A stretch of 64,000 bases of DNA from IMGVR_UViG_3300043410_001471:181437-245436; one strand, 5' to 3'. Positions 32,801 through 60,517 are shown, counted from the stretch's first letter. A program made the numbers and translations. The notes: generated from the sequence alone by a model not told the origin.

Positions 32801-33121
32801 TTACATAGATTCGACTTATCAGTTGTACAAGATATCTATGTAAAGGTTAAAGGTAAAAAGAATACAATTCAAATCAGAGCAGATATCTTAAACTTTGGTA
32901 ACTTATTGAACAATGAGTGGGGTGTTTCTCAAAGAGCAACTATCCCAACTATCTTAAACTATTCAACTACTAATTCGGCAGGTGAACCAGTTTATAAGTT
33001 AGCAACTCAAAAATTAGCAGATGGTTCTACTATCTTAGCTAGAGATACTTATCAATATAATTCATCAGTATTTGATGTATGGTCAGCACAATTAGGAATT
33101 CGTTATATTTTTGGAAAATAA
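29849..33121 (+). CDS. TonB-dependent outer-membrane receptor (Oar/SusC-like, N-terminal carboxypeptidase-regulatory-like domain)
   Basis: Signal peptide (FG|Q), plug motif NNFTIDG...GGINAVTRSG, C-terminal QLGIRYIF. Confidence 0.92.
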   Translation: MKKVILSLLLSVSAFVGFGQVTTSSISGVVKNEKNEVLVGATIQAVHTPTGTKYSTSTNKLGSYVLPAVRVGGPYTIQATFVGTKKDEVTDVNTQLGTTSNVNFLLVDENKTLKEVVVVSTRNNIISRERTGASQQFTRRDLQNIPITGARTIDGITKYNPNGNGNSFGAQDSRLNNFTIDGSQFNNGFGLGSSAQAGGRTGASAISLDAIEQLQVNIAPFDIRQSGFTGAGINAVTRSGTNEIEGSVYQTQRDNSSTYVGDNARGTKVTASKFDEKVQGFRLGAPIIKNKLFIFGNYEQIEKTEPGTTWISTGSPLTGSQISRPTYTQLSDLSKFMQDKFNYTTGPFEGYSNTNASKKFLVRMDWNINDKHKLTARYVHHDSEAEINISNSTSAGFGNRTTSALAMSFQNSGYIIMDNTRSYVLELNSKLSNTLHNNLIVGYDKQIEDRAYRSQMFPTIDIKDGATTLTSVGFDPFTPGNKLDYNTFHITNNLTKYADKHTLTLGFNYEKYQSNNLFFPASNGVYIFNSLSDFYTAANQSLANGGAPSTLVPARFQFRYSALPGAVEPMQTLKTDRLDVYGQDEFQATENLKFTFGLRAAIISFEQTALENPAVTAMTFAGGLKFNTGVLPKTQTLFEPRFGFNHDVFGDRKTQVRGGTGIFTGRPPYVFISNQVGNNGVLTGYIDVSGSAAAKYGFTADPNKYFIPSTPTLPSTFDLAFTEENYKFPQVWKSNIAVDQKLPFGFIGTAEYIQNVNLNAVHYYNANFGVPTGVFAGVDKRAKYAGTDAGVRVNGNVSNAIVLANSDNTRFSSLTLKLEYPYQKGIFGSFAWTVSDAKDFMSAGSIASGSWTGARSINGNNELNLANSDNLSPNRLVGLLGYRLEYGKGLGGATSFTLGYVGNQGNPFSYTIGGDMNGDRIAGNELIFVPSQMSDIKFAPLTVGTRTYTEAEQQAAFWSYIEQDEYLSTRRGQYAERNGSFLPMLHRFDLSVVQDIYVKVKGKKNTIQIRADILNFGNLLNNEWGVSQRATIPTILNYSTTNSAGEPVYKLATQKLADGSTILARDTYQYNSSVFDVWSAQLGIRYIFGK

Positions 33122-33186: not shown

Positions 33187-34854
<1,668 letters not shown>

Positions 34855-38649: not shown

Positions 38650-39498
38650 ATGTTGTTAAGAAAAGGTGATAATAACGAAGATGTAAAAAAATTACAAGCT
38701 AAATTGGGTGTAGAACCTATGGGTAATTTCGGACCAAAAACCGAAGAAGCCGTTAAAGCTTGGCAACTGAAGAATGGTTTAACTCCGGATGGTATTGTAG
38801 GACCGGCAACTTGGGCAAAGATAATGGGAGAATCCATAACTGCACAAGTTTCAAATACACAATCAGTAGCATCAACTCCAGCACCACAAGTTGCAGGATT
38901 AAAATTAGATAAACTTAAAGGACATGTTCCTCAAGTTGTAATAGATTCAATTCCAGAAGTTGCTTCTAAATTTGGTATCAACACTCCATTGAGAGTTGCA
39001 CACTTTTTAGCACAATGTGGACACGAAAGTGGTGGATTCAGAGTAACGCAAGAAAACTTAAACTATTCAGCAAAAGGTTTGAATGGTATATTCAAAAAGT
39101 ATTTCCCAACTGAAGCTGCAGCAGCGGCTTATGCTAGAAATCCACAAAAGATTGCTAACAAAGTTTACTCTAATAGAATGGGTAACGGAACTGAAGCAAG
39201 TGGAGATGGATACAAATTCAGAGGACGTGGTTATATTCAATTGACAGGTAAAGATAACTACACTGCATTTGGTAAATCAATCGGAGTGGATATTCCAAAC
39301 AATCCCGATTTAGTAGCATCTAAATATGCATTAGCATCAGCAGCTTGGTTCTTCTCTAAGAACGGATTACATAAGATGGCAGATGAGGGGGCAAGTGATG
39401 TAGTTGTAACAAAGATTACAAAAAGAGTAAATGGTGGGACAATTGGATTGCCAGATAGAATCAAACACTTCAAAGAATATTATCATTTATTAGCATAA
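38650..39498 (+). CDS. Endolysin: peptidoglycan-binding domain + GH19
   Basis: DGIVGPATW, AHFLAQCGHES, FRGRGYIQLTGKDNY, TKRVNGG. Confidence 0.92.
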   Translation: MLLRKGDNNEDVKKLQAKLGVEPMGNFGPKTEEAVKAWQLKNGLTPDGIVGPATWAKIMGESITAQVSNTQSVASTPAPQVAGLKLDKLKGHVPQVVIDSIPEVASKFGINTPLRVAHFLAQCGHESGGFRVTQENLNYSAKGLNGIFKKYFPTEAAAAAYARNPQKIANKVYSNRMGNGTEASGDGYKFRGRGYIQLTGKDNYTAFGKSIGVDIPNNPDLVASKYALASAAWFFSKNGLHKMADEGASDVVVTKITKRVNGGTIGLPDRIKHFKEYYHLLA

Positions 39499-40573: not shown

Positions 40574-41624
40574 AAAATATCAGCAATTACTTTCAGATAT
40601 TATTGAATTTGGAGTAGAGAAAGAAGATAGAACCGGAACGGGTACTATTTCATTATTTGGAGAACAAATTCGCCATAAAATGAGTGAAGGGTTTCCCTTA
40701 CTTACTACAAAGAAAATGGCGTGGAAAACAATAGTAACTGAATTGAAGTGGTTTTTACAAGGTGATACCAATATCAAATACCTTGTTGATAACGATTGTC
40801 ACATTTGGGATGGTGATGCATATAAAAACTATTCCGAAACTTGGAATGCAGAAAATCCACCATTCGCCGGTCCTTATACCGATGTTGAACCATTTCTTAC
40901 TAAAGAGGAATTCATTAAAAGAATCAAAGAAGATTCAGATTTTGCAAATACATATGGTGAGTTAGGACCAATCTATGGCGCACAATGGAGAAGATGGACT
41001 TGGGATTTAAACCCAGACCCAATTGACCAAATCCAAAATTTAATCAATGAATTAAAAACAAATCCAGATAGTAGAAGATTGATGGTAAGTGCTTGGAATG
41101 TCGGTGCGTTAGAATCAATGGTACTTCCACCTTGTCATTATGGATTTCAAGTTTATACAAGAGAGTTGAGTTTGAATGAAAGAGGTGAATTGTTTAGAAA
41201 AACATATCCAAACAAATCTGTTGATGACTTCAAACCAAATGGAATGGAAATCCAATCAATGACACACCAATTAGACACAAGATACACTAACGCAAATATC
41301 CCAACCAGAGCAATCTCTTTAATGTGGAATCAACGAAGTGTAGATACATTCTTAGGATTACCATTCAATATCGCATCATATGGATTATTATTGTTAATGA
41401 TTGCAGATGAAGTAAATATGGTTCCTGATGAATTGATTGGTAATTTAGGTGATGTTCATTTGTATAAGAATCACATTGAACAGGCTAAAGAACAAATCAG
41501 TAGAAAACCAATGGAATTACCATCGGTTCATATTATGGATGGCATATATTCATTTATGCCAGGCGATGTCATATTAGAAAATTATAATTCACATCCAACA
41601 ATTAAAGCACCTTTAAGTAATTAA
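40554..41624 (+). CDS. thyA: Thymidylate synthase
   Basis: DRTGTG, LPPCH, QRSVDTFLGLPFNIASY. Confidence 0.97.
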   Translation: MMNNIDKKYQQLLSDIIEFGVEKEDRTGTGTISLFGEQIRHKMSEGFPLLTTKKMAWKTIVTELKWFLQGDTNIKYLVDNDCHIWDGDAYKNYSETWNAENPPFAGPYTDVEPFLTKEEFIKRIKEDSDFANTYGELGPIYGAQWRRWTWDLNPDPIDQIQNLINELKTNPDSRRLMVSAWNVGALESMVLPPCHYGFQVYTRELSLNERGELFRKTYPNKSVDDFKPNGMEIQSMTHQLDTRYTNANIPTRAISLMWNQRSVDTFLGLPFNIASYGLLLLMIADEVNMVPDELIGNLGDVHLYKNHIEQAKEQISRKPMELPSVHIMDGIYSFMPGDVILENYNSHPTIKAPLSN

Positions 41625-41682
41625 CAAATAAATAATTTCGATTTGAATTATTTCCTATATTTATAGATGATAATAATCATTT

Positions 41683-42333
41683 ATGAAACAGGCGGTATTA
41701 CATTTGAGAAATAATATTTTAGATTACTTAGTACAAGGATTCGCATACTTTGTATGTGTATGGATTGTATTTGCACTATGTTTTCAACTATTCTTTGTTT
41801 ACTTACATTTTTCAGGTAAAGATGTTTTGGCAGGCCAGATATCAAATGAAATAATGTGGAGAATTGATGGTACATTCAAAAATAATCCAAACAACATTAT
41901 GTATAACGCCGAAGACCATATATGGGTTGAATCGGTAACCAATCAGGTTAAAATCGGTAAGTTAGCCGGTAATAGAAATTTAGAATTCGGTTTAAAAAAT
42001 ATATTAGAAGAATTTTTACAAGAGAAGGGATTGGATTTAGCTCCATCTGCAACTCAAAGATTAAAAGTGGACATCATTTATTTAGATGTTCTGACTACAA
42101 AAAAGAATATATCAGTATTCCACTCTAATGAGGAGGAAGTTGTTATCCGTTTAAGAGGTACACTCTATAAGGATGGTAAAAAAGACAAAGAGGTTATGGT
42201 TGAAGAAAGTTCATCTGAAATCTCAATGTCAACTCTCATAGTAGATGAAGGTGGTAAGTTCAACCAAACATCATTGTCAAATGCATTGAAAAAAGGTTGC
42301 GATAAACTTATCACTAAACTACTAGGAAAGTAA
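41683..42333 (+). CDS. Membrane-anchored protein, CsgG-like fold suspected
   Basis: N-terminal TM; C-terminus KFNQTSLSNALKK resembles KFNQSTISIATKK of 48381 ORF. Confidence 0.55.
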   Translation: MKQAVLHLRNNILDYLVQGFAYFVCVWIVFALCFQLFFVYLHFSGKDVLAGQISNEIMWRIDGTFKNNPNNIMYNAEDHIWVESVTNQVKIGKLAGNRNLEFGLKNILEEFLQEKGLDLAPSATQRLKVDIIYLDVLTTKKNISVFHSNEEEVVIRLRGTLYKDGKKDKEVMVEESSSEISMSTLIVDEGGKFNQTSLSNALKKGCDKLITKLLGK

Positions 42334-42334
42334 A

Positions 42335-43987
42335 ATGAAAAAATTAATTATGTTTTTAGGGATACTATTGATATCCTTAACTTCTTATGGACAATTGACA
42401 ATCAGTCAATCTCTATCACCTAACTCAAATTTAAAAGTGGGTGATACTATTACAGTATCTTACAATTTAACCAAAGGACAGGTAATCAAAAATCCTCGTT
42501 ATCTTTGGTTTAGATATCAGTACAATAACAAAGCATTGGCTTATGTATCTACTGCATTTAATCAAGGAACATCTGCACAAACTTTCTACACTGGTTGGAG
42601 TAACTACAAATTTACTTTCAATGGTGGTGCGAGTGATAATGATTTAGATGTTCAGTACGGATTGACCCCTTGGAATTATGCAGTAAACGCAGATTGGAAT
42701 GTTGGACAATTGACAGTTCAAAGAGCAGATGCATCTATTAGTGGTTTAATTGCTACTCAAAAGTATATCTTAAAAGACCAAAACACTTACAACAACATTT
42801 TCAAAATAGATTTAGCAACTGGTACTGATACAACAGGTGCAGCGGTTGGAACAATCTATGGTGGTGGTTGGTCATCATTGGTAGGTGTAAAAGGTAATAC
42901 ATCTCAATTCAAAGTAAAAGTTCTTTATCCACAAGGATACACTATTACTGACCATAGTGTTCAATTAATGAGATTGAAATCGGATGGTAGTGGTATGATT
43001 GATTGGTCACAACAACCTATTGCACAATTACCATTGGATGCAAGTGGTGAAGCACTTTTCACAACACAAGTTAAAGTTGGTGATTCAGTTGGTGTATTTG
43101 TTGGACCTGCATTTCAAAAAAGTTGGATGAATAACATTGTGACCGTATCCGATGCATATAAGGCATTTTTAGGACATGCACAAACTGATATTAGTGGAAC
43201 TGCAAACTTCTTTACATATCCTACATTGGAAAAAAGAGTTGGTAAAATAACCACTAATTCAAATCCATTTGGTGAAGGTGATTCATATGCATTATTTGCA
43301 CATGTAATGGGACAAGATATGACATCAGTATCAATGATTCCAACATCAACATCATCATCTATTAGATGGCAAAGTGGTTTGTTGAATCAAAGTTGGTTAG
43401 ATGGCACACCTACAAGTAGAGTGTTAATTGATTCTCCTATAAAAGAAGTATACGCAGTATATGCTTGGGGTGGTGATTTAAACTGGTCACACTCATCAGA
43501 ACCATCTGCGATTGTAGCTAAAATAAGTGCAGGACAATATACAAATGCAGTAAGTGATAAATCGGTAAATACAATCAAATCTATGAGTACTGCTCCAATG
43601 GCATACCAAACTTTGGCAGTAGAAACGGCTAAATTAAGTGTAACATCTACATTGGAAGGTGGTAAAGTAGTATTAACTACAAATTTAACAAAAGAAGGTT
43701 TAGCAGGTTTACAAGTGATTATGAACTACGATGAATCTAAATTAACATTGGATAATGTGATATTTGATGCAGGAAGTACAATCACAAACTTCTCAACACA
43801 TAAAGATGGTAGATTAACATTTGGTTCTATTGACCAATTGAAAACTGCGAGAATCAAAGTTGGTACTCCATACAAATTAATATTCACACCAAAAACACCA
43901 TTAACAAATACAGCAGGATTATTCTATTTTGTATTATCGGATGCAGTAGATGCTAGTGGTAATAAAATCGACTTAATAGTTGAATAA
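42335..43987 (+). CDS. Secreted beta-rich protein with cohesin-like domain(s)
   Basis: Signal peptide (SYG|Q); GLQVIMNYDESKL cohesin-like strand pattern. Confidence 0.65.
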   Translation: MKKLIMFLGILLISLTSYGQLTISQSLSPNSNLKVGDTITVSYNLTKGQVIKNPRYLWFRYQYNNKALAYVSTAFNQGTSAQTFYTGWSNYKFTFNGGASDNDLDVQYGLTPWNYAVNADWNVGQLTVQRADASISGLIATQKYILKDQNTYNNIFKIDLATGTDTTGAAVGTIYGGGWSSLVGVKGNTSQFKVKVLYPQGYTITDHSVQLMRLKSDGSGMIDWSQQPIAQLPLDASGEALFTTQVKVGDSVGVFVGPAFQKSWMNNIVTVSDAYKAFLGHAQTDISGTANFFTYPTLEKRVGKITTNSNPFGEGDSYALFAHVMGQDMTSVSMIPTSTSSSIRWQSGLLNQSWLDGTPTSRVLIDSPIKEVYAVYAWGGDLNWSHSSEPSAIVAKISAGQYTNAVSDKSVNTIKSMSTAPMAYQTLAVETAKLSVTSTLEGGKVVLTTNLTKEGLAGLQVIMNYDESKLTLDNVIFDAGSTITNFSTHKDGRLTFGSIDQLKTARIKVGTPYKLIFTPKTPLTNTAGLFYFVLSDAVDASGNKIDLIVE

Positions 43988-43988
43988 T

Positions 43989-46283
43989 ATGAAACACTTA
44001 TTAGTTACATTATTCTTATTCATATCATTTTTAGGGTTCGGACAGAGTGTATCTGCTCCGGACTCTAAATCGTTTATACCATCCACAACTGCACAAGATG
44101 CAAGTGGATTTGTATTGAGTGGATTCAATTCTACATCAACTCTATTAGCATCAATCAGTTTAGTAGAATACCCATCAGGTACTACATTCTATCTAACTAC
44201 CACAACAGGTTTAACTGCGGCAAGTGGATTTACATTGTCGGGAAATAAAACTCGATTAGTTGTAACGGGAACGATGGCTAATATCAATACGGCATTGGCA
44301 TCCCTAAAAGTAAATACTGGTTCGGTAGTAGGAAATGTTAAATTATCAGTAGCAGCAACAGTCAATCCAATCGGTTACTATTATAATGGTGTAAACGGAC
44401 ACTTTTACAAACCTGTATATCCTGGAACAACTTATACTAATGCAAGAGCAATATCTTTAACAACAACATTCAAAGGACAACAGGGATATTTGGTAACAAT
44501 TACATCAGCTTCGGAAGATGCTTTTATTCAAGCCAATGTTCCTCAAACCAATATATGGTTCGCCGCAACGGATGAAGTAATAGATGGAACTTGGGTAATA
44601 GATGCTGGTCCTGAAAAGGGAACTGTAATGAAAACAAGGAATGGTAATCTTAATGGAAACATTCCAGGTGTATATAACAACTGGGCAAGTGGTGAACCAA
44701 ATGGTAGTAATCATACTGAGGATTATGCGGTAACAAAATGGAATGGTAATTTATGGAACGATTTAAATAACAATTGGAATAATGCGTATGTAATTGAATA
44801 TGGAACTTGGAGTAATCCAGATGACCAAACATTTACCGAATTTTATACCAATTCAGTAAATCACTCAAATGGCTCAGTATTAAGAACTCAATTTAATTTT
44901 GATTTTGGTGGGAATGTAGATGAAACTAAATTCTCAGCAAAAGCAAACACTTATGTAAATAATGTATGGGGAACAACAAATTCAACTGCAAGAGCATTAA
45001 GTGGGTTAGGTAAAGTTGATATTACAAGTGATTTGGATACTGTTAAAATAAGTGGTAATGGTGTAAAAGCATCAACAACTGCTGGATATGCTGAATGGTG
45101 TGTAATATACGAATATGAAGTAACAAACCAAAGATATAGAGTTGGAATCGATAGTAGAGAGGTTACAGGTATTTTATCTGACCCATCAACAATCAGTAGT
45201 TTACAATTATTTGATTTATGGAATGGACCAGTTACCTATGGTAGTTATGACTCGAATGGTTGGACAGAGGTTTATATCTATACCACAACACCATTGAATT
45301 TCGCTGGTTCATCTTATACATCTAATATTAGAAATGGTGGTTCATATTATGCATTAACTGCAGAATTTACATTTTCACCAATTCAAAGTTACAAACAACA
45401 TGGAATTGAAATTGTTGCGAATTCACAAACTGAATTAAACACTTTATATACGAATATTGTAACAGTATCAGATGTTTATTTAGCATTTAAAGAATTATCG
45501 AATGGTGGTATATTGGGAAACCAAAGTGGATTGGAATTTGGAAATGGTATCCAATATATGAATGCGGATGTGGATGGTAATGGTTCATTTAATGAAGCAG
45601 ATACTTACAAACTATTACAACATTTGAGTGGGATTGCACCACTAACACAATATTCAGCATTAACTTATTTGATGAAATTATATAACAAATCAGATTATGA
45701 TGTAATAACAAAATCAAATTGGAATACACAATTAAATTCAACAAGAAGTTTGATTCCATTTAATTTGAACACTGGTGCATTGAATAACACTTACAATATA
45801 AATGTAACATGGGTAGGTGATGTAAACCTTTCACATTCAGCACAACAAACCCAAAGTAGTGTTGCAACTAATTCAATTAGAACTATGAGTTTGACAACTA
45901 ATTCGGTTTCAAATATCATAAACGCAGAATTGATGGGCGAAAATGTGGGTGGTAAGTTAGTTGTAACAATTACATTAGACCCGTTACAACAAGAAGTGGT
46001 TGGAACTCAATTTAATTTGAATTATGATAATACTGCTCTTAAATTTGAAAAAGTAGATTTTGTAACAAAGGGTAATCCTACCAATTTTGGAACTGATAAG
46101 GGAACATCTATAATATTTGGTTCTTTAATTACGGATGGTTCAACTACATTGGATAAAACGACTCAATACAAAATAACATTTGCACCACTAATGATGCTAG
46201 GTGATAATTTGGGATTAACATCTATATCACTAACTGATGCGGTTAATAAGAATGGTACACAATTAAAAGTAAAGTTAAACTAA
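43989..46283 (+). CDS. Secreted protein: C-type lectin + dockerin/EF-hand-like + cohesin-like domains
   Basis: Signal peptide (GFG|Q); YLVTITS..WF..W..YNNWASGEPN..WNDL lectin motif; DVDGNGSFNEAD; GTQFNLNYD. Confidence 0.75.
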   Translation: MKHLLVTLFLFISFLGFGQSVSAPDSKSFIPSTTAQDASGFVLSGFNSTSTLLASISLVEYPSGTTFYLTTTTGLTAASGFTLSGNKTRLVVTGTMANINTALASLKVNTGSVVGNVKLSVAATVNPIGYYYNGVNGHFYKPVYPGTTYTNARAISLTTTFKGQQGYLVTITSASEDAFIQANVPQTNIWFAATDEVIDGTWVIDAGPEKGTVMKTRNGNLNGNIPGVYNNWASGEPNGSNHTEDYAVTKWNGNLWNDLNNNWNNAYVIEYGTWSNPDDQTFTEFYTNSVNHSNGSVLRTQFNFDFGGNVDETKFSAKANTYVNNVWGTTNSTARALSGLGKVDITSDLDTVKISGNGVKASTTAGYAEWCVIYEYEVTNQRYRVGIDSREVTGILSDPSTISSLQLFDLWNGPVTYGSYDSNGWTEVYIYTTTPLNFAGSSYTSNIRNGGSYYALTAEFTFSPIQSYKQHGIEIVANSQTELNTLYTNIVTVSDVYLAFKELSNGGILGNQSGLEFGNGIQYMNADVDGNGSFNEADTYKLLQHLSGIAPLTQYSALTYLMKLYNKSDYDVITKSNWNTQLNSTRSLIPFNLNTGALNNTYNINVTWVGDVNLSHSAQQTQSSVATNSIRTMSLTTNSVSNIINAELMGENVGGKLVVTITLDPLQQEVVGTQFNLNYDNTALKFEKVDFVTKGNPTNFGTDKGTSIIFGSLITDGSTTLDKTTQYKITFAPLMMLGDNLGLTSISLTDAVNKNGTQLKVKLN

Positions 46284-46624
46284 TGAAGAAGATAATATTA
46301 ATATCGTTAATTTTGTTAGTAGGATGTACTAAACCAGAATTACCAACACCAGTATTGCCTGTTGAAAAAATATTTAATGCAACTGAAAGTTCAGTAACAA
46401 ATGGACAATCTATACACTTTGATTTACCATCGGTAGGAGTGTATACATTAACTTTAATAGATAAAGAAAGTGGGCAAGTTGTAAGTAGAGAAAGATTTAA
46501 TGGTATAAGTGGTGAAAATGTAAAAAAGATTTATACGAAATCATTACAAAGTAGATATTTATATTTGTTATTGGAAGATGTTACTAAAAAAGAATTAGGT
46601 AAAACAACAATAATAATAAACTAA
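46283..46624 (+). CDS. Lipoprotein with T9SS-CTD-like Ig domain
   Basis: Lipobox LLVG|C; C-terminal ~70-aa beta-sandwich pattern. Confidence 0.6.
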   Translation: MKKIILISLILLVGCTKPELPTPVLPVEKIFNATESSVTNGQSIHFDLPSVGVYTLTLIDKESGQVVSRERFNGISGENVKKIYTKSLQSRYLYLLLEDVTKKELGKTTIIIN

Positions 46625-46993
46625 ATGAAAAAATTAATTTTAACATTTGCGATAGCAGCTTTATTGGTAGGATGTAGTAAAGAAGATATCATCCCAACAC
46701 CTCAATCGGTATCGGAAGATTTGAAGATTGCAAGTTCGGTGGGTATCAAAGTACAATCACACTTTGTAACATCGGAAGTTGCAATGAATGTAAAAACTGA
46801 AACTGCTCAATCAGTAACGATTAAAATATTCGATATTGGAAATAGAGTAGTATCAAAAGAAACAATGAATGTAGTAGCAGGTGATAATGTACTTAAAGTA
46901 TATACATCAGCATTACCATCATCTGCATATAGAATAGGATTATTCGATGCAAGTGGTAGACAATTAGGAATAACAGATTTTAACAAATTATAA
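46625..46993 (+). CDS. Lipoprotein with T9SS type-A sorting-domain-like C-terminus
   Basis: Lipobox LLVG|C-SKED; IKIFDIGNRVV..G.N..LPSSAY. Confidence 0.7.
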   Translation: MKKLILTFAIAALLVGCSKEDIIPTPQSVSEDLKIASSVGIKVQSHFVTSEVAMNVKTETAQSVTIKIFDIGNRVVSKETMNVVAGDNVLKVYTSALPSSAYRIGLFDASGRQLGITDFNKL

Positions 46994-47006
46994 AAAACAA
47001 TTTACA

Positions 47007-47327
47007 ATGGCAGAAGAACAAGAAGAAAAAGGTGGTACTTCAATTAAAAGTATCTTAATCGGTTTAGTGAGTACTATCACATTAGGAGTTGGTGGTTTCA
47101 TTACAAACAAATTAACAGGTGGTGAAGAAGAAAAACCTGCAGTACAACAAGCTGCACCTGTTATCAATATTCAAAACACTCAAAATCAATCTCAATCGGC
47201 AGGTGGTAAGACTGTAATCATTAAAGAGAAAGCAGTTGGTGGTGGAAATGCTCAACCAGCACAACCTCAACCAAAGCCTAAGAAGAAAGAAGGCGATGAG
47301 TTCAAAGAAGAAGCACCAAAGTGGTAA
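47007..47327 (+). CDS. Single-TM protein with Gln/Pro-rich tail
   Basis: Hydrophobic segment at residues ~14-33. Confidence 0.7.
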   Translation: MAEEQEEKGGTSIKSILIGLVSTITLGVGGFITNKLTGGEEEKPAVQQAAPVINIQNTQNQSQSAGGKTVIIKEKAVGGGNAQPAQPQPKPKKKEGDEFKEEAPKW

Positions 47328-47416
47328 TTTATAAATTAGGCGTAGTTGTAGTTATGTTAATGTTATTAGCAAGTGCAATCTATGTAGGATTAAAACAACA
47401 AAAAGAAAATGAGTAA
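47321..47416 (+). CDS. 31-aa single-TM microprotein, absent from the ORF track
   Basis: GTG start; VIYKLGVVVVMLMLLASAIYVGLKQQKENE; overlaps both neighbours. Confidence 0.45.
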   Translation: MVIYKLGVVVVMLMLLASAIYVGLKQQKENE

Positions 47417-48014
47417 TCAACAACCGCCAAGCGGATTTAAGGATTTATTAAATTCAATGATGTCCAGAAGATGGTACATCACTGCGTTAGTATTGGGTTC
47501 ATTCATATTAATCATCGGAGGTATTTTCGGTGCAATTACATCGAATACGGCAGCATCGGCAGAATGGAAAGAACTTCTATTATTAATGTTGGGTGCTTTC
47601 ATTGGTTCTTATGGTAAAATCATTGACTATTGGTTTAGTGATACCGATAAGGATAAAATGTTAGTTCAGAAAATGGATGAAGAAGATGGTACATCGTTAA
47701 GTAATACGGCGGATATGCCAGATACTCCAATCGTTCCTATGAGTGTAGCACCATTAGTATTACCAAATACCGAAGAATCAGTAGTATCACTACCAAAAAC
47801 TGAAGAAAAACAAACCGAAAAGAAAGGTGTTGAAATTGATGAAGATGGCGATGGCGTAATGGATGGTTTAGATTTCGATGGTGATGGTAAGATTGATGAA
47901 TACTTCGCACATAGACAATGTGAGCATGTATGGGGAGATTTGGATGGCGATGGTGAAGAAGAATGTTTAAAATGTGGTAAAATCAGAGATGATGATGCCG
48001 AAATGGTAGGATAA
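47409..48014 (+). CDS. Two-TM protein with DxDGDG (Ca-binding-like) repeats
   Basis: Two TM helices; DEDGDG, DFDGDG, DLDGDG; CEH..CLKC. Confidence 0.7.
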   Translation: MSNQQPPSGFKDLLNSMMSRRWYITALVLGSFILIIGGIFGAITSNTAASAEWKELLLLMLGAFIGSYGKIIDYWFSDTDKDKMLVQKMDEEDGTSLSNTADMPDTPIVPMSVAPLVLPNTEESVVSLPKTEEKQTEKKGVEIDEDGDGVMDGLDFDGDGKIDEYFAHRQCEHVWGDLDGDGEEECLKCGKIRDDDAEMVG

Positions 48015-48051
48015 ATAGGTTACATAGTATTAACAATTTAAATGTAAAACT

Positions 48052-48309
48052 ATGACTTTTAAAGAATGGGTAATTGATTTATTCAAAGATGAAAGAGGAG
48101 CAATATCAGTAAAACCTGTAATTGCATTCGTTGGAGCATTATTCTTATGTGGAACAATGTTAGTGAACTCTTTCTCACATGGTGATATCAAACCAGCAGC
48201 AGAATTGGTAAACGCAGTAATGGTAATCACAGCAATCGGAATGGGAGCTGATACATTAGATAAGTTTACACATAAAAAGAGTGAACCTAAAGAAGAAGAA
48301 TTAGGATAA
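48052..48309 (+). CDS. Small two-TM membrane protein (holin-like)
   Basis: Two hydrophobic helices, charged C-terminus. Confidence 0.6.
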   Translation: MTFKEWVIDLFKDERGAISVKPVIAFVGALFLCGTMLVNSFSHGDIKPAAELVNAVMVITAIGMGADTLDKFTHKKSEPKEEELG

Positions 48310-48318
48310 TAATTGAAA

Positions 48319-48346
48319 AGGGAGAACATAGTTTCTCCCTTTTTTT
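48319..48346 (+). terminator. Rho-independent terminator
   Basis: AGGGAGAA/TTCTCCCT stem + T-run. Confidence 0.8.
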
Positions 48347-48380
48347 ATACTTATACATAAACGAACAAACTCATTTATGT

Positions 48381-49103
48381 ATGAAAAATTTATTAGTATT
48401 ATTAAGTTTCTTTTTGTTAAGCAGTGTTGCGGGTGTTGCTCAAACAATAGGAAGCACTAAAACAGAGCAGTACAAAGCATCCTTCGAAACAAAATCGGAC
48501 ATTAGTCAATTTTTAAATTATGAAGGAAAGCAAATTCCGATTCAAATCCTTAAATGTGGTATTGGTGATGAAGTTTATGACCAATATCCGGAGCTCAAGG
48601 AAAAGAGAGTTGGTTTGGGTGTGGCTAATATCACGCTTGAATATTTGGATAATCTTAACCGATTTACATTTACGGAAGATAAAACTGAAATTAAAAACAG
48701 AATGGTTAAGCAGTTTCAGGCATCTCAAGCAGGCATTTCGGAAGATAAATTGGATGGTAGAGGAAAAATCCGTTTAGCACATTACTTTGTTGAAATAGAA
48801 GTATATGACTATTCCGTTTCCGAAGATGAAACAATCAATTTAAAAGATGGTATCAAAGATAATATGGTAACTCGTTTAGGTTTACAGGTTAGATTCACAA
48901 ACGCAGAGAATGGTACTATTATCGCAGCATCTGGTTTAGGTGAAGCAACTACAAAAAGAGAATTAACTCTATTATCAGATGCAACTATTGACCCTATAAA
49001 ATTCAACCAATCAACTATTAGTATTGCAACAAAGAAAGCATTGGATATCGCTTGTGCAAATATATTAGGTAAAATGGTTAAAAAGGGAGTATTTGAAAAA
49101 TAA
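48381..49103 (+). CDS. CsgG/HfaB-family protein
   Basis: Signal peptide (GVA|Q); LGLQVRFTNAENGTII..SGLGEA CsgG-like strand. Confidence 0.65.
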   Translation: MKNLLVLLSFFLLSSVAGVAQTIGSTKTEQYKASFETKSDISQFLNYEGKQIPIQILKCGIGDEVYDQYPELKEKRVGLGVANITLEYLDNLNRFTFTEDKTEIKNRMVKQFQASQAGISEDKLDGRGKIRLAHYFVEIEVYDYSVSEDETINLKDGIKDNMVTRLGLQVRFTNAENGTIIAASGLGEATTKRELTLLSDATIDPIKFNQSTISIATKKALDIACANILGKMVKKGVFEK

Positions 49104-49108
49104 TTATT

Positions 49109-49327
49109 ATGAAATATATTACATTCCTTATATTCTTATTTTTAGTTAGTTGTACGCCTGTTAGAAAAGTAAATGTTTATAGCAAACACAATTATTATCA
49201 AAGACATAGAACCAACACATATACATCTCCAACTTGGATTCCAGGTAGAGGTATCATATTGGAAACACATATACATAAGTTACCCAAAAGAAGTTACGCC
49301 CCTAAAGTTAGAAGAGGAAGGCATTAA
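49109..49327 (+). CDS. Small basic lipoprotein
   Basis: Lipobox FLVS|C. Confidence 0.65.
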   Translation: MKYITFLIFLFLVSCTPVRKVNVYSKHNYYQRHRTNTYTSPTWIPGRGIILETHIHKLPKRSYAPKVRRGRH

Positions 49328-50868
49328 TGAAAAAATGGTTAGTAAGTTTATCAATAATGGTTATGTTCATATTTGCTCAAGAAGCGAAAGGGCAAACCTA
49401 TACCCAAACATTCGTAGATAAATGTAGTGGACAAATCAAAACGGCAACAACTACTATGGTTAATGGTAACGCCGTTGTTTCCTTTTATGACCAAGTTAAA
49501 GTATTTACTCCATTGGAAGTACAAAGTGGAGCAGTTAAACTTTGGTTAAACGCAACATATTTAGCATATTCAACAATGGGTTGTCCTACTAACATAGTAG
49601 TTCAGCAAACAGTCCAACAAACTGTAAATAACGCAGTATCACAGGCAGCATCATCTGCGGCAACTCAAGCGGCTAGTGCGGCAGCAAGTTCAGCAGCTTC
49701 ATCAGCTGCGAGTTCAGCCGCATCAACTGCAGCAAGTTCAGCCGCAAGTTCGGCGGCATCTTCATCGGCATCTACGGCAGCAAGTAATAGTGCAAGTTCA
49801 GCGGCATCATCATCCGCTAGTTCTGCATCATCAACTGCGGCAAGTAGTGGTGCAACGGCATCTACATCATCAACTGCTTCAACTCCACCACCAGCAAGTA
49901 GTAGTTCATCATCTACGAATTCATCGAGTAGCAGTTCATCGAATAATAGTAATTCATCATCATCTTCATCCGAAACTAAATCGGAAAGTAGTAGTTCATC
50001 ATCATCTTCATCTGAATCAAAATCAGAGACTAAATCGGAAACAAAGAGTGAATCTAAATCCGAATCAAAATCTGAAAGTAAGAGTGAGGAAAAGAAAGAG
50101 GAATCTAAATCAGAATCTAAAAAGGAAGAGAAAAAAGAAGAATCTAAAAAAGAAGAAAAGAAAGAGGAGAAGAAGGAAGAGAAAAAAGAGGAAAAGAAAC
50201 AAAAGGCTCAAAATATGAATCCGTTGTTAATAGCATCGGATTTAACAACCGCTGAAGACCAGGATGGTACATACAATGCAATCGCATCGGTAGGTATTAG
50301 TAGAAGTTCAATGGCTGGAGATGTAACCTATTCCCTAAACTCTATGATATGGAGTTCATTAGACCAATTCGCATTAAGTAGTGGTATAACTAAAATGAAC
50401 TTTGAAGGTGGTAAGTTATCATCTATCAATTCATACTCATTGACATCGGCATATCTTAAAGGTAGTTGGATGGGATTGATGGGGTATACCTATATCAAAC
50501 CACATCCTAAATTGGGAGTATATGGATACAATGTGGGAGCAGTGATGTTAATGATGCCAGGTAGTAAACAAAAATGGGATGTATCCCTATCTACATCGGC
50601 AGTAGCATTTTGGACCAAACCATTTCAGTATAGTAAGAAATTAACACTTTCACCGCAAGTATTCGCAATGTATTCTCCAATTGGATATAATACATTTACC
50701 GGAAATACTGCAGTAGGTAGACACTTTGGATTTTTGGTAGGTTCTTCGGTTGATTATAAAATCAGTAGAAGATTTGGATTCTCATTTAACTATAAGTTGA
50801 ATATGAATACACAACCTGGTCAGAAATTTACAAGTAACTTTTTGATTGGAACAAGAATGATGCTTTAA
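49327..50868 (+). CDS. Secreted protein with Ser/Ala and Glu/Lys low-complexity stalk and beta-barrel-like C-terminus
   Basis: Signal peptide (AKG|Q); ASSAA and KKEE repeats; amphipathic beta-strands in the last ~210 aa. Confidence 0.75.
   Translation: MKKWLVSLSIMVMFIFAQEAKGQTYTQTFVDKCSGQIKTATTTMVNGNAVVSFYDQVKVFTPLEVQSGAVKLWLNATYLAYSTMGCPTNIVVQQTVQQTVNNAVSQAASSAATQAASAAASSAASSAASSAASTAASSAASSAASSSASTAASNSASSAASSSASSASSTAASSGATASTSSTASTPPPASSSSSSTNSSSSSSSNNSNSSSSSSETKSESSSSSSSSSESKSETKSETKSESKSESKSESKSEEKKEESKSESKKEEKKEESKKEEKKEEKKEEKKEEKKQKAQNMNPLLIASDLTTAEDQDGTYNAIASVGISRSSMAGDVTYSLNSMIWSSLDQFALSSGITKMNFEGGKLSSINSYSLTSAYLKGSWMGLMGYTYIKPHPKLGVYGYNVGAVMLMMPGSKQKWDVSLSTSAVAFWTKPFQYSKKLTLSPQVFAMYSPIGYNTFTGNTAVGRHFGFLVGSSVDYKISRRFGFSFNYKLNMNTQPGQKFTSNFLIGTRMML
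49640..50200 (+). repeat. Coding low-complexity tandem repeats (ASSAA / SES(K) / KKEE)
   Basis: Degenerate codon-level repeats inside the 49327 ORF. Confidence 0.85.
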
Positions 50869-51122: not shown

Positions 51123-51758
51123 ATGAAGAGAATTTTATCCATTGTTATGCTATTGGTTATAGCAACAACATTAAACGCACAAGATGTAGTACAATTGAAA
51201 CATCTTAATTACACATCACATTTCAGTAAATCAAAAAAATACCCTGTAATGGTAGAATGGTGGGAAACTAAAATCAAAGTTGGATGCGCAACTCCACTTC
51301 CTCGTAAGGATAACTTTAAGCCAGACCCATTATTACCAAAAGAAACTAACATCGGACAAGATTATGTAAATAGTGGATACGATAGAGGTCATTTAATGCC
51401 AGCAAAATCAAACCAATGTCAAACAACATTTGTACAAGATGAGTGTTTCTATTATTCTAATATGGCTGCACAAACACATAGATTAAATGCAGGAGATTGG
51501 AAATCATTGGAAACTCTAACAAGAGAATGGGCAGTAGTACAAGATTCGGTGCATGTGTGGGCTGGAAATGTTGGTGAGATTAAAAAAATAGGTACAACAT
51601 CAGTTCCAAAACAATGTTGGAAAGTAGTACATATTAAGAAAACAAATGAGTGGTTCTTTTACTTATTTGAGAATGATTTATCAGCACCAGATGGTATCAA
51701 TAACAATAAGGTGTTAAGAGAAGATATAGAGAAATTGACAGGTTTTAAATTCCAATAG
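51123..51758 (+). CDS. Secreted DNA/RNA non-specific endonuclease (NucA/EndA family)
   Basis: Signal peptide (LNA|Q); YDRGHL, SNMAAQ..LN..W. Confidence 0.92.
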   Translation: MKRILSIVMLLVIATTLNAQDVVQLKHLNYTSHFSKSKKYPVMVEWWETKIKVGCATPLPRKDNFKPDPLLPKETNIGQDYVNSGYDRGHLMPAKSNQCQTTFVQDECFYYSNMAAQTHRLNAGDWKSLETLTREWAVVQDSVHVWAGNVGEIKKIGTTSVPKQCWKVVHIKKTNEWFFYLFENDLSAPDGINNNKVLREDIEKLTGFKFQ

Positions 51759-58270: not shown

Positions 58271-58341
58271 CGTGGGGTAGTGTAACGGTAGCATATTGGG
58301 CTCATAACCCTAAGACGGAGGTTCGAATCCTCCCCCCGCAA
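58271..58341 (+). tRNA. tRNA-fMet(CAT)
   Basis: C1.A72 mismatch, GGG/CCC anticodon stem, cloverleaf. Confidence 0.92.
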
Positions 58342-59837: not shown

Positions 59838-59844
59838 TATATAA

Positions 59845-60485: not shown

Positions 60486-60517
60486 TAGTGTAAGATTTAG
60501 ATAAAAGATATTTAAAG

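What the first reader, a model, noticed from the sequence alone, without database searches (positions are those of the whole stretch)
41683..50868. Phage-encoded cell-envelope export/surface-display module (CsgG-like pore, lectin/cohesin proteins, lipoproteins, stalked beta-barrel)
Seen: twelve consecutive + strand ORFs (counting the 31-aa microprotein), all with a signal peptide, lipobox or TM segment, in two units each preceded by the ATA(T/C)TTATA motif. They include two mutually similar CsgG-like proteins (41683, 48381), two cohesin-like paralogues (one with a C-type lectin), three lipoproteins, three membrane proteins and an S/A-E/K-stalked protein with a barrel-like end. Known: CsgG forms the outer-membrane secretion pore for curli, and virion proteins normally lack signal peptides. 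Inference: a dedicated apparatus that remodels the infected Bacteroidota cell surface (adhesion, aggregation, receptor masking). I know of no described phage system with this layout. Best candidate for a new system in the window.
Basis: partly seen in the sequence, partly recalled or inferred. Interest (0 to 1): 0.82.

Follow-up and report, generated by a model that had tools for sequence, protein, structure and literature searches.

The report
Phage-encoded host cell-envelope gene cassette
A very common group of large aquatic phages of Bacteroidota carries a conserved block of about eleven genes whose products all go to the host's membranes, periplasm or surface (sugar-binding adhesins, an outer-membrane barrel, two curli-pore-like proteins), so the virus appears to re-equip the envelope of the cell it infects, for a purpose nobody has tested.

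Summary
Eleven solid genes plus one doubtful micro-ORF at 41683-50868 all start with a signal peptide, lipobox or membrane segment. Almost no other gene in the window does.

The block is tightly packed and split in two by a terminator. It keeps its order in at least 80 related viral contigs, and its core recurs in Flavobacterium phage immuto and in marine contigs.

- **48381 (I):** a distant CsgG-superfamily protein by profile and by fold. It has no lipid anchor, and its two hairpins are short and charged, so a CsgG-type pore is not supported.
- **41683 (A):** a remote LptE/YajG-like paralogue of I.
- **49327 (K):** the true membrane part, a 12-stranded barrel of NanC/FapF/autotransporter type. 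A long disordered tether and a cysteine-paired head precede it.
- **42335 and 43989 (B, C):** modular adhesins. Relatives swap the head (C-type lectin, PA14 or LCCL) on a constant dockerin-like plus cohesin stem, and distant relatives add a type IX secretion tail.

Endolysin and a secreted nuclease hover around the block.

Best reading (about 0.4): a phage envelope-remodelling and surface-display island. Rivals are a lysis or egress device and nutrient scavenging.

Phage CsgG genes and huge-phage outer-membrane proteins are already reported. This cassette is not.

The parts
41657..41665 (+). ATATTTATA promoter-like element upstream of A
   Evidence: One search gives the position. The same 9-mer lies within 90 nt upstream of A in 22 of 58 distinct relatives. 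It is not enriched in the window as a whole.
41683..42333 (+). A: membrane-anchored LptE/YajG/CsgG-superfamily domain protein (216 aa)
   Evidence: Pfam Lipoprotein_16 at 4.6e-5, below cut-off. Atlas neighbours are LptE/CsgG-labelled. hhalign to the I family gives 86.5%. In relatives the N-terminal 75 aa membrane part is a free-standing gene, and the domain then has a cleavable signal peptide.
42335..43987 (+). B: secreted protein (550 aa), unknown N-terminal half, then dockerin-like segment and cohesin-like C-terminus
   Evidence: Signal peptide. Cohesin at 4.6e-4, below cut-off. Homologous to the C-terminal 280 aa of C.
43989..46283 (+). C: secreted modular adhesin (764 aa) with a C-type lectin head, a dockerin-like F-hand and a cohesin domain
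   Evidence: Lectin_C 26.6 bits and Cohesin 24.9 bits, both above cut-off. The EPN and WND sugar/calcium motifs lie in residues 228-260, which match mannose-binding proteins. The stem is homologous to a marine phage protein that carries a type IX sorting tail.
46283..46624 (+). D: small lipoprotein (113 aa) with an Ig-like domain
   Evidence: Lipobox LVGC. Paralogue of E. Family members hit DUF3244 (18 of 35) and Por_Secre_tail (12 of 35) weakly.
46625..46993 (+). E: small lipoprotein (122 aa), same family as D
   Evidence: Lipobox LVGC followed by SKED. Across the family the Cys is followed by x-K-x-(D/E). DUF3244 at 6e-3 and Por_Secre_tail at 0.03.
47007..47327 (+). F: single-pass membrane protein (106 aa) with a Q/N/P/K-rich linker and a conserved C-terminal motif ending in Trp
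   Evidence: Membrane segment at 15-33. The C-terminal K-K-K-(E/D)-G-D-E-F-K...W is almost invariant in 57 relatives. A counterpart exists in immuto and marine contigs.
47321..47416 (+). 31-aa hydrophobic micro-ORF (doubtful gene)
   Evidence: Listed. A comparable small hydrophobic ORF lies in the F-G gap in only about 5 of 40 relatives.
47409..48014 (+). G: inner-membrane protein (201 aa) with an acidic DxDGDG-repeat and Cys/His C-terminal region
   Evidence: Membrane segment at 24-42 plus a second hydrophobic stretch. 6405 homologues, none named. The N-terminal 95 aa are nearly identical in marine contigs. Topology is unresolved.
48052..48309 (+). H: holin-like 85-aa protein with two membrane segments and a charged tail
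   Evidence: Weak match to holin_phiLC3, E 0.11. In relative L012 an analogous 91-aa protein occupies this slot, with one gene between it and the endolysin.
48315..48344 (+). Intrinsic terminator between the A-H and I-K units
   Evidence: 12-bp stem followed by a T-run. The hairpin plus T-run is conserved upstream of I in many relatives.
48347..48355 (+). ATACTTATA promoter-like element upstream of I
   Evidence: Present upstream of I in 18 of 59 distinct relatives.
48381..49103 (+). I: secreted CsgG-superfamily protein (240 aa), the most conserved gene of the block
   Evidence: The family profile hits E. coli CsgG at 5.7e-5. 15 of 34 relatives hit Pfam CsgG. AlphaFold2 pLDDT is 84.6 and the top PDB matches are CsgG at 1e-7. 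The conserved Y-P-E-L aligns with the CsgG constriction loop. There is no lipobox and the hairpins are short and charged. Median identity among relatives is 85%.
49109..49327 (+). J: 72-aa basic, Pro/Tyr/His-rich lipoprotein (optional)
   Evidence: Lipobox LVSC. Found in only 5 relatives by BLAST. Another small lipoprotein fills the same slot in L017.
49327..50868 (+). K: outer-membrane protein (513 aa) with signal peptide, Cys-paired head, S/A/P then E/K linker, helix and 12-stranded barrel
   Evidence: Alignment of 31 relatives: conserved C33/C86, variable linker, conserved barrel. In the AlphaFold2 model the barrel blocks have pLDDT 81-93 and a helix spans 270-295. PDB matches are the COG4313 channel, OmpG, PcoB, NanC, FapF and autotransporter barrels, E about 1e-6. 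No Pfam family matches.
51123..51758 (+). Associated gene: secreted DNA/RNA non-specific endonuclease
   Evidence: Endonuclease_NS at 9e-32 with a signal peptide. Lies within 10 kb of the block in 19 of 37 full-length relatives, at shifting positions, and next to it in immuto and marine contigs.
38650..39498 (+). Loosely linked gene: endolysin (PG_binding_1 + GH19), no signal peptide
   Evidence: Lies within 10 kb of the block in 14 of 37 full-length relatives: upstream in 7, downstream in 5, inside in 2. It sits directly upstream of A in L090.
29849..33121 (+). Possibly related: phage-encoded TonB-dependent-receptor-like outer-membrane protein (1090 aa) with signal peptide
   Evidence: CarboxypepD_reg at 3e-15 and OMP_b-brl_4 at 1e-52. 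A 30%-identical homologue lies inside the block, between I and J-K, in relative L012.

Best explanation
This is a conserved accessory island of a very abundant lineage of large phages of aquatic Bacteroidota. All of its products leave the cytoplasm, and together they re-equip the envelope of the infected cell. It has three layers.

1. **Surface layer.** B and C are modular glycan-binding adhesins. Relatives swap the head (C-type lectin with intact EPN/WND site, PA14 or LCCL) on a constant dockerin-like plus cohesin stem. D and E are small Ig-like lipoproteins. These proteins are meant for the cell surface. Distant relatives route the cohesin protein through the host type IX secretion system.
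2. **Inner-membrane layer.** F is a tether with an invariant C-terminal peptide, G is a membrane protein of unresolved topology, and H is holin-like.
3. **Outer-membrane layer.** K is the membrane part: a 12-stranded barrel with a preceding plug-like helix and a long flexible tether that ends in a disulfide-type head. That head probably hangs in the periplasm. I and A are CsgG/LptE-fold proteins that lack CsgG's membrane hairpins. They most likely form a periplasmic cap or plug for K, or for a host barrel, as LptE does for LptD and PelC for PelB.

**Shown:** the export signals, the folds, the domain content, the synteny and the abundance.

**Inferred:** that the parts work together, that B and C reach the surface in this clade, and that the purpose is to change what the infected cell's surface binds. 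That purpose could be receptor masking or superinfection exclusion, or sticking the cell to particles or neighbours.
For: - **Export signals:** every gene has one, against a background of about 1 in 10.
- **Operon-like packing:** tight junctions with one internal terminator.
- **Synteny:** the block is kept while its flanks change. Presence in informative relatives: A 49/54, B 45/54, C 50/54, D and E 41/54, F 64/71, G 57/71, K 74/81 by tblastn.
- **Wider distribution:** the core (lectin, cohesin, F, I, K, A, nuclease) recurs in distant lineages, namely phage immuto, TARA marine contigs, L082 and L090.
- **I:** CsgG fold.
- **K:** 12-stranded barrel.
- **C:** lectin with EPN/WND.
- **Adhesin modularity:** heads are swapped among relatives and Por_Secre_tail is above cut-off in immuto and TARA proteins. 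C is the least conserved gene (50%) and I the most (85%).
- **Context:** a second phage outer-membrane protein, TonB-receptor-like, lies in the window and inside the block in L012. Huge phages are reported to encode many outer-membrane proteins with envelope genes beside them (bioRxiv 10.64898/2026.10.24.761521).
Against: - There is no experimental data on any member.
- No type IX tail was detected on B or C of this clade, so how they would cross the outer membrane is open.
- No protein-protein contact was tested.
- The endolysin and a holin-like gene sit in or beside the block, which suggests that part of it serves lysis.
- The secreted nuclease and the porin-like folds of K fit nutrient uptake equally well.
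- The signal peptides could simply allow disulfide formation before release at lysis.
- The read-laying run failed, so I have no direct expression evidence. Metatranscriptome runs holding 5-19% of the sampled words of gene I are only a hint.
Confidence: 0.4

Rival explanations
1. Lysis or egress device. H is the holin for the nearby signal-less endolysin. F (inner-membrane tether), K (outer-membrane barrel with a long periplasmic tether and Cys-paired head), the lipoproteins and the CsgG/LptE-fold proteins form a spanin-like or channel-like system. That system breaches the Bacteroidota outer membrane or times its breaching. The nuclease thins the lysate.
For: - The endolysin has no signal peptide.
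- It lies within 10 kb of the block in 14 of 37 full-length relatives, at shifting positions. It is inside the block in two of them, L012 and L069, and in L012 one gene separates it from a holin-like 91-aa gene. It lies directly upstream of A in L090 and about 6 kb downstream in immuto.
- H has the shape of a class II holin.
- Phage csgG/csgF genes in Melnitz and pelagimyophages were likewise proposed to regulate lysis, on the basis of synteny with a lysin (PMC9004378).
Against: - Large lectin, PA14 and cohesin adhesins with type IX tails have no role in lysis.
- Immuto and the marine contigs keep F, I, K and A but lack H and most of G.
- F has no coiled coil.
- J, the only Rz1-like small lipoprotein, is optional.
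- The block lies among replication and nucleotide-metabolism genes.
Confidence: 0.2
2. Nutrient-scavenging auxiliary module. The secreted nuclease digests external or periplasmic nucleic acid. K is a small solute or oligomer channel, like Tsx, NanC or KdgM, that imports the products. The lectin-type proteins and lipoproteins capture glycans, as surface proteins of polysaccharide-utilisation loci do. The TonB-receptor-like protein adds uptake capacity for a phage with a large genome.
For: - K matches 12-stranded solute channels (NanC, COG4313, PcoB, OmpG), and its Atlas neighbours are Tsx/OmpK and KdgM.
- The nuclease is linked to the block in 19 of 37 relatives and sits next to it in distant lineages.
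- The block lies beside thymidylate synthase here and beside ribonucleotide reductase in immuto.
- The TonB-receptor-like gene is in the window and inside the block in L012.
- The huge-phage preprint finds transport genes beside 12- and 22-stranded phage outer-membrane proteins.
Against: - It does not explain the long tether and Cys-paired head of K, the CsgG/LptE-fold proteins, F, G, H, or the cohesin-dockerin stems.
- No SusD-like partner, phosphatase or inner-membrane transporter was found in the block.
- The fold matches of K are generic for 12-stranded barrels and include polypeptide transporters.
Confidence: 0.15
3. I (with A) is a CsgG-type outer-membrane secretion pore. With K it forms a dedicated phage translocon that exports B and C to the surface.
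For: - I has a CsgG fold and a conserved Y-P loop aligned with the CsgG constriction.
- More distant relatives of I are lipoproteins, like CsgG.
- B and C of this clade lack a type IX tail and so need some other route.
- K resembles the polypeptide channels FapF and autotransporter barrels.
Against: - The two hairpin regions of the whole I family are short (about 21 and 19-23 residues against 28 for the first in E. coli), carry up to 9 charged residues (8 and 7 in the window protein) and show no alternating hydrophobic face.
- I has no lipobox in this clade.
- The window protein has no Pfam CsgG hit.
- No CsgE, CsgF or CsgA-like genes are present.
- CsgG passes unfolded chains, whereas B and C are large multi-domain proteins whose C-type lectin fold normally needs disulfides.
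Confidence: 0.1
4. Not one system. Independent accessory genes for exported proteins (adhesins, lysis genes, outer-membrane proteins) merely accumulate in one permissive region of the genome.
For: - Endolysin, nuclease, thymidylate synthase, a TonB-receptor-like gene and other genes move in and out of the region.
- H, J, D and E are dispensable in some lineages.
- The block has two transcription units.
Against: - The order A-B-C-D-E-F-G-(H)-I-(J)-K holds while the flanks change.
- The core set co-occurs in lineages as distant as 37-52% identity in I.
- Genes are translationally close-packed.
Confidence: 0.15

Closest known systems
Curli secretion channel CsgG (type VIII secretion; Pfam PF03783, PDB 4UV3/4UV2)
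   Same: I has the same alpha/beta fold (Foldseek E 1e-7). Its family profile aligns with residues 1-194 of E. coli CsgG, including the Y-P of the constriction loop. Distant relatives of I are lipoproteins.
   Different: I has no lipid anchor in this clade. Its hairpins are short and charged instead of two membrane hairpins. The window protein itself has no Pfam hit. There are no csgE/F/A/B partners. Oligomeric state is unknown.
Phage-encoded csgG/csgF of pelagimyophage HTVC008M and methylophage Melnitz (PMC9004378; PMC7029224)
   Same: A phage carries a CsgG-family gene without amyloid subunit genes. It lies near a lysin, the function is unknown, and the proposals are lysis timing, uptake or 'sibling capture'.
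   Different: tblastn with I finds only immuto phages among 50,697 phage records, so this is a separate lineage. There is no CsgF. Here the gene is embedded in a 9-kb cassette with a barrel protein, an LptE-like paralogue, lectin and cohesin adhesins and lipoproteins.
Plug or cap lipoproteins of outer-membrane barrels: LptE-LptD and PelC-PelB
   Same: A and I share the LptE/PelC/CsgG-type fold (PelC 4e-5, LptE 2e-3; Atlas). I is always encoded next to a barrel protein. A bacterial relative of I also sits beside a predicted barrel, DUF3187.
   Different: K has 12 strands, not 26 (LptD) or 16 (PelB). No LPS or polysaccharide synthesis link was shown. No contact was tested.
Twelve-stranded barrels with an N-terminal helix: FapF amyloid transporter and type Va autotransporter translocators
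   Same: K has a C-terminal 12-stranded barrel directly preceded by a helix, with an N-terminal domain on a long linker.
   Different: There is no sequence-family match. The linker is low-complexity S/A/P then E/K rather than a coiled coil or beta-helix passenger. The conserved Cys pair 53 residues apart argues against autotransport of the head.
Type IX secretion cargo of Bacteroidota (type A C-terminal sorting domain, Por_Secre_tail)
   Same: Homologous cohesin proteins of immuto and marine phage contigs carry a Por_Secre_tail above Pfam cut-off. D and E give weak hits to the same domain and to DUF3244.
   Different: B and C in this window end with the cohesin domain and have no detectable sorting tail of type A or B.
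Outer-membrane proteins of huge phages (bioRxiv 10.64898/2026.10.24.761521)
   Same: Large phages, many from freshwater, encode 6- to 22-stranded barrels, including TonB-dependent receptors, often next to envelope-related genes.
   Different: That survey does not mention CsgG, LptE, lectin or cohesin and does not describe this cassette.

Membership tests
CsgG/HfaB family (curli-type outer-membrane channel) | CsgG alpha/beta core fold | tested here: met
   The AlphaFold2 model has pLDDT 84.6. The top 22 PDB matches are CsgG chains, E 1e-7 to 3e-5, TM 0.35-0.57. The family profile hits CsgG at 5.7e-5.
CsgG/HfaB family (curli-type outer-membrane channel) | Match to Pfam PF03783 above threshold | tested here: not met
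   The window protein has no hit at E up to 1. 15 of 34 aligned relatives do match, best 1.9e-17, so membership is transitive only.
CsgG/HfaB family (curli-type outer-membrane channel) | N-terminal lipobox (outer-membrane lipoprotein) | tested here: not met
   The signal peptide ends ...VAGVAQ/T with no Cys. Relatives from TARA, L082 and bacteria do have a lipobox.
CsgG/HfaB family (curli-type outer-membrane channel) | Two amphipathic hairpins per subunit that build the membrane barrel | tested here: not met
   Hairpin regions are 22 and 23 residues with 8 and 7 charged residues and no hydrophobic alternation. The same holds across the family. The AlphaFold2 monomer shows one long hairpin only.
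CsgG/HfaB family (curli-type outer-membrane channel) | Nonameric ring | not testable with these tools
   No multimer prediction was available.
CsgG/HfaB family (curli-type outer-membrane channel) | Partner genes csgE/csgF and amyloid substrate csgA/csgB | tested here: not met
   No such Pfam or NCBIfam hits in any gene of the block.
C-type lectin domain | Pfam Lectin_C above cut-off, with the calcium/sugar site motifs | tested here: met
   C scores 26.6 bits against a cut-off of 22.6. E-P-N and W-N-D lie in residues 228-260, which align to mannose-binding proteins.
Cohesin-dockerin modules | Cohesin domain above cut-off | tested here: met
   C scores 24.9 bits against a cut-off of 24.1. B scores 20.8, below cut-off. 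Relatives reach 31-43 bits.
Cohesin-dockerin modules | Dockerin (duplicated calcium-binding F-hand) | tested here: inconclusive
   C has a single D-V-D-G-N-G...D...L-L segment and no Pfam hit. One relative hits Dockerin_1 at 21.2 bits against a cut-off of 22.9.
Type IX secretion cargo | C-terminal sorting domain (type A Por_Secre_tail or type B) | tested here: not met
   None in B or C. Present in the homologous immuto and TARA proteins. D and E reach only sub-threshold scores.
Type Va autotransporter | C-terminal 12-stranded barrel preceded by a pore helix | tested here: met
   Helix at 270-295, then about 12 strands at 300-512. NalP, BrkA and EspP are among the matches, E about 3e-6 to 2e-5.
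Type Va autotransporter | Autotransporter sequence family and a translocation-competent passenger | tested here: not met
   No Pfam Autotransporter hit. The passenger would be a small head with a conserved Cys pair 53 residues apart plus low-complexity linker.
Phage lysis cassette (holin, endolysin, spanin) | Holin-like small membrane protein next to an endolysin | tested here: inconclusive
   H has two membrane segments and a charged tail and matches holin_phiLC3 at only E 0.11. The endolysin lies 2.2 kb upstream of the block here and one gene away from a holin-like gene in L012.
Phage lysis cassette (holin, endolysin, spanin) | Spanin pair (membrane-anchored coiled-coil protein plus small proline-rich lipoprotein) | tested here: not met
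   PHROGs gives only signal-peptide-level hits. F has a low-complexity linker, not a coiled coil. J is optional.
LptD/LptE-type plug-and-barrel pair | LptE-fold protein encoded with its barrel | tested here: inconclusive
   A and I have the fold, and I is adjacent to K in nearly all relatives. K is 12-stranded, not LptD-like. Contact was not tested.

The most novel reading that the evidence does not exclude
The block is a self-contained, phage-built envelope-spanning machine of a new kind. A CsgG-fold ring (I, with A) caps a FapF/autotransporter-like 12-stranded barrel (K). The inner-membrane tether F reaches it with its invariant C-terminal peptide. The machine exports or anchors the phage's own lectin-cohesin adhesins independently of type IX secretion, or couples the two membranes for release.
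Probability: 0.12. Interest if true: 0.85.

Novelty: new variant of a known kind. Interest (0 to 1): 0.6.

Why it matters
**Abundance.** The lineage is extremely common. I has 5,967 and G has 6,405 distinct homologues at 90% clustering in public metagenomes. There are 512 confirmed loci in IMG/VR, on contigs up to 333 kb.

**Neglected side of infection.** Yet not one protein of the block has a name or a tested function. It would be an abundant, tractable example of a phage installing its own outer-membrane and surface proteins in Bacteroidota. These bacteria are key degraders of algal and particulate carbon.

**If it masks receptors or glues cells to particles,** it bears on superinfection, on phage spread in blooms and on particle export.

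**If it is the missing outer-membrane step of lysis** in Bacteroidota phages, it fills a real gap.

**A model is available.** Phage immuto, with its host Flavobacterium sp. LMO8, is cultured and carries the core genes.

Tried and rejected
**Searches that found nothing**
- Megablast of the block against 50,697 phage records: no match.
- tblastn of G and of the K barrel against phages: no match. I finds only the four immuto records.
- PHROGs: only signal-peptide-level hits.
- PADLOC: nothing meaningful.
- NCBIfam: no type IX tail, PorP/SprF, spanin or CsgG hits.
- Pfam on 31 K relatives: only low-complexity artefacts.
- The profile of the A family against PDB sequences: nothing.
- Plain BLAST of E against a type IX tail-bearing homologue: nothing.

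**Calls that failed or gave little**
The scan with the K alignment found four loci, all looking like phage contigs inside metagenome bins (Sediminibacterium, Bacteroidia, Micavibrio) rather than a bacterial operon.
- Laying metatranscriptome reads failed on a filter and used the only call, so I have no expression data. I record only that RNA runs hold 5-19% of the sampled words of gene I.
- Bacterial contexts of distant I relatives gave no known system: small unknown genes, one DUF3187 barrel, and fusions to caspase-like and kinase domains.

**Rejected readings**
- Virion proteins, because all products carry export signals.
- A chromosomal Bacteroidota locus, because none was found.
- A type B sorting tail or a PorP-like identity for K, because no family hits support either.

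Full report
**What is there.**
The window is phage DNA. All genes are on the + strand and G+C is about 31%. It carries a DNA polymerase, GroEL, glycosyltransferases and an endolysin, thymidylate synthase (by inspection of the 40554-41624 translation), and a tmRNA with 23 tRNAs. It is 100% identical in gene I to a 245-kb IMG/VR contig.

Between 41683 and 50868 lie eleven solid genes and one doubtful 31-codon ORF.
- A hydropathy scan of every + strand gene shows that each of them begins with a strongly hydrophobic stretch.
- Three of them (D, E, J) have lipoboxes.
- Only about one in ten of the other genes in the window scores similarly.
- Junctions are 0-14 nt or overlapping.
- A 12-bp hairpin with a T-run at 48315-48344 divides the block into A-H and I-K.

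Even so, it is found within 90 nt upstream of gene A in 22 of 58 distinct relatives and upstream of gene I in 18 of 59, usually right after the terminator. It is probably part of a phage promoter.

**The individual proteins.**

*I (48381, 240 aa).*
- It has no Pfam hit of its own.
- A profile of 34 diverse relatives hits E. coli CsgG in the PDB at 5.7e-5 over residues 1-194, and 15 of those relatives hit Pfam CsgG.
- The AlphaFold2 model is confident (pLDDT 84.6, pTM 0.75). Its best PDB matches are all CsgG (E 1e-7), followed by PelC, GNA1162, FlgT and LptE.
- The most conserved motif of the family, Y-P-E-L...V-G-L-G, aligns with the Y-P of the CsgG constriction loop.
- Against a pore: the window protein has an ordinary signal peptide without a Cys.
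- Also against a pore: the two regions that correspond to the CsgG membrane hairpins are short (22 and 23 residues, against 28 for the first in E. coli). They carry 8 and 7 charged residues and have no hydrophobic face. This holds for the whole family.

*A (41683).*
- It gives a sub-threshold hit to the YajG lipoprotein family, and its Atlas neighbours are labelled LptE/CsgG.
- It aligns with the I family at 86.5% probability over the same loop-helix segment.
- Its first 75 residues form a membrane module that is a separate small gene in many relatives. There the domain carries a cleavable signal peptide instead.

*K (49327, 513 aa).* Its conserved architecture is:
- a signal peptide;
- a 65-residue head with two invariant cysteines;
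- a linker of variable length, S/A-rich, then P/S-rich, then E/K-rich;
- a barrel.

AlphaFold2 gives a helix at 270-295 followed by about twelve strands, with pLDDT 81-93. The PDB matches are the 12-stranded COG4313 channel, PcoB, NanC, FapF, autotransporter and intimin barrels, plus OmpG (E about 1e-6). No Pfam family matches.

*C (43989).*
- It has a C-type lectin domain above cut-off with intact E-P-N and W-N-D motifs.
- It also has a single dockerin-like calcium loop and a cohesin domain above cut-off.

*B (42335).* It shares the C-terminal 280 residues with C.

*The C-type position across relatives.* The head is exchanged for PA14 or LCCL, while the stem is kept.

*D and E.* They are paralogous lipoproteins. 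Their family gives weak but repeated hits to DUF3244 (18 of 35) and to the type IX sorting domain (12 of 35).

*F.* It is a single-pass membrane protein. Its last residues, K-K-K-(E/D)-G-D-E-F-K...W, are almost invariant.

*G.* It is a membrane protein with an acidic DxDGDG-repeat and a Cys/His tail. It has 6,405 unnamed homologues.

*H.* It is an 85-residue protein with two membrane segments and a charged tail, which is the shape of a class II holin.

*J.* It is a small basic lipoprotein present in few relatives.

**Comparative evidence.**
- I has 5,967 homologues at 90% clustering and 512 confirmed loci in IMG/VR.
- In the 80 best loci the order A-B-C-D-E-F-G-(H)-I-(J)-K is kept. Presence counts are A 49/54, B 45/54, C 50/54, D and E 41/54, F 64/71, G 57/71, H 28/71 and K 74/81.
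- The flanking genes differ between loci.
- I is the most conserved gene (median 85% identity) and C the least (50%).

The core recurs in much more distant phages.
- *Flavobacterium phage immuto.* The order is nuclease, lectin, unknown, cohesin, F, I, K, A, and I is 52% identical.
- *TARA marine contigs.* The order is cohesin, the G N-terminal part, nuclease, F, I, K, A. I is a lipoprotein there.
- *L082*.
- *L090.* This compact version sits on a 112-kb contig binned with a Sediminibacterium genome. Its order is endolysin, A, one B/C-like gene, one D/E-like gene, F, I, K.

In immuto and the marine contigs the cohesin protein ends with a type IX sorting domain above the Pfam cut-off. That makes it cargo of the host's own secretion system and points to the cell surface as its destination.

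No bacterial chromosomal counterpart of the cassette was found. Distant bacterial relatives of I are lipoproteins next to unknown small genes or a DUF3187 barrel, or are fused to caspase-like or kinase domains.

**Linked genes.**
- A secreted non-specific nuclease (51123) lies within 10 kb of the block in 19 of 37 full-length relatives.
- The signal-less endolysin lies within 10 kb in 14 of 37.
- Both sit at shifting positions, sometimes inside the block.
- In L012 a holin-like gene and the endolysin (one gene apart) and a TonB-receptor-like outer-membrane gene all sit inside the block. A homologue of the last is at 29849-33121 in the window.

**How it most likely works.**
The export signals, folds, domain content, operon-like packing and conserved co-occurrence are shown. 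The rest is inference.

I read the block as an envelope-remodelling island with three layers.
- The adhesins B and C, with D and E, go to the surface. They bind sugars through exchangeable heads, and their cohesin and dockerin-like parts may link them to each other or to an anchor.
- K is the only credible membrane channel or anchor in the outer membrane. Its conserved, widely spaced cysteine pair makes a periplasmic head on a long tether more likely than an autotransported passenger.
- I and A lack membrane hairpins. They probably form a periplasmic cap or plug, as LptE and PelC do for their barrels.
- F may reach this complex from the inner membrane with its invariant C-terminal peptide.

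The likely pay-off is a changed cell surface: receptor masking or superinfection exclusion, protection of progeny from debris, or attachment to particles or neighbours. I give this 0.4.

The rivals are:
- a lysis or egress device (0.2), favoured by H and the endolysin linkage and by the published lysis proposal for phage csgG/csgF (PMC9004378);
- nutrient scavenging (0.15), favoured by the nuclease, the porin-like matches of K and the TonB-receptor-like gene;
- a mere gathering of independent accessory genes (0.15).

**Comparison and novelty.**
Phage-borne csgG/csgF genes are known in pelagimyophages and in methylophage Melnitz, with unknown function. A BFVD entry from an uncultured phage is even labelled CsgG and matches the model of I at 8e-8.

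A preprint of October 2026 reports 1,603 outer-membrane barrels in huge phages, including TonB-dependent receptors, often beside envelope genes. It does not mention CsgG, LptE, lectin or cohesin.

So the phenomenon is known in outline. This specific, very abundant cassette is undescribed: CsgG-fold and LptE-fold proteins, a tethered 12-stranded barrel, lectin-cohesin adhesins, small lipoproteins and membrane proteins. I file it as a new variant of a known kind.

It is not a member of the curli system. The fold test is met, but the lipid anchor, the membrane hairpins, the family threshold and the partner genes are not.

**Limits.**
- There is no expression, localisation or interaction data.
- The one read-laying run failed.
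- The signal-peptide calls rest on hydropathy and inspection, not on a trained predictor.
- The idea that the Cys-x-K-x-(D/E) pattern after the lipobox of D and E is a Bacteroidota surface-export signal is from my own knowledge and was not tested.

Noticed in passing
window 29849-33121 (+); L012 10868-13885: A phage-encoded 1090-aa outer-membrane protein with signal peptide, CarboxypepD_reg domain and a large OMP_b-brl_4 barrel, so it is TonB-dependent-receptor-like. A 30%-identical homologue lies inside the envelope block, between I and J-K, in relative L012.
   Followed up: partly
window 54466-54839 and 58271-63881 (+): A phage tmRNA gene (tag peptide ending ...ADLAVAA) and an array of 23 tRNA genes. 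The tRNA region explains the higher G+C at the end of the window.
   Followed up: no
window 33205-34854, 13700-16349, 11298-12533, 28257-29309 (+): A phage GroEL, two adjacent glycosyltransferases, a radical SAM protein and a GHMP-family kinase. The glycosyltransferases and the kinase could belong to a sugar or surface-glycan pathway related to the lectins, but this was not examined.
   Followed up: no
window 40370-40573 (+): A 67-aa single-pass membrane protein between the endolysin region and thymidylate synthase. It is another holin candidate. A counterpart was found in 7 relatives.
   Followed up: no
window 41683-41910; e.g. L017 9780-9995, L040 3600-3815: The N-terminal membrane module of A (about 75 aa, with a conserved W-K-x-D-G-x-F-K-N-x-P-x-N-I-W-Y segment) exists as a free-standing 71-76-aa gene just upstream of I in many relatives. 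In those relatives the LptE-like domain has an ordinary signal peptide.
   Followed up: partly
window 47262-47327 (C-terminus of F): The last 15 or so residues of F, K-K-K-(E/D)-G-D-E-F-K-E-x-x-P-x-W, are nearly invariant in 57 relatives, while the rest of the periplasmic part is low-complexity and variable. This looks like a docking peptide.
   Followed up: partly
L015, L017, L032, L048 and others (B/C-type gene); L001 8743-9741: An alternative single adhesin gene replaces B and C in a sub-clade and always ends in ...I-K-L-T-G-Y-N-N-F. The immuto lectin ends in ...V-G-Y-N-N. This may be an unrecognised C-terminal sorting or anchoring signal.
   Followed up: no
proteins P0220, P0226, P0231, P0250, P0260 (bacterial relatives of I): Distant bacterial relatives of I are fused to a caspase-like domain (H-G...D-S-C motifs) or lie at the C-terminus of Ser/Thr protein kinases. 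This hints that the fold can act as a periplasmic sensor or anchoring module rather than a pore.
   Followed up: no
L017 8859-9776: In one sub-clade a 305-aa protein of the acyl-CoA:6-APA acyltransferase / peptidase C45 type (Pfam AAT, 3.7e-6) sits between H and the small membrane gene upstream of I. Other relatives have the endolysin in this part of the block.
   Followed up: no
window 48030-48329 (-) and 49676-50218 (+): A 99-aa antisense ORF over gene H and a 180-aa alternative-frame ORF over the low-complexity linker of K are almost certainly not genes. The second is a by-product of the repetitive S/A and E/K codons.
   Followed up: no
L090 (contig JBBAJS010000010.1, 112 kb, binned as Sediminibacterium sp.): A compact version of the cassette lies on a one-strand, phage-like contig inside a Chitinophagaceae genome bin. 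This is a weak hint about the host range of the wider lineage, or a binning artefact.
   Followed up: partly
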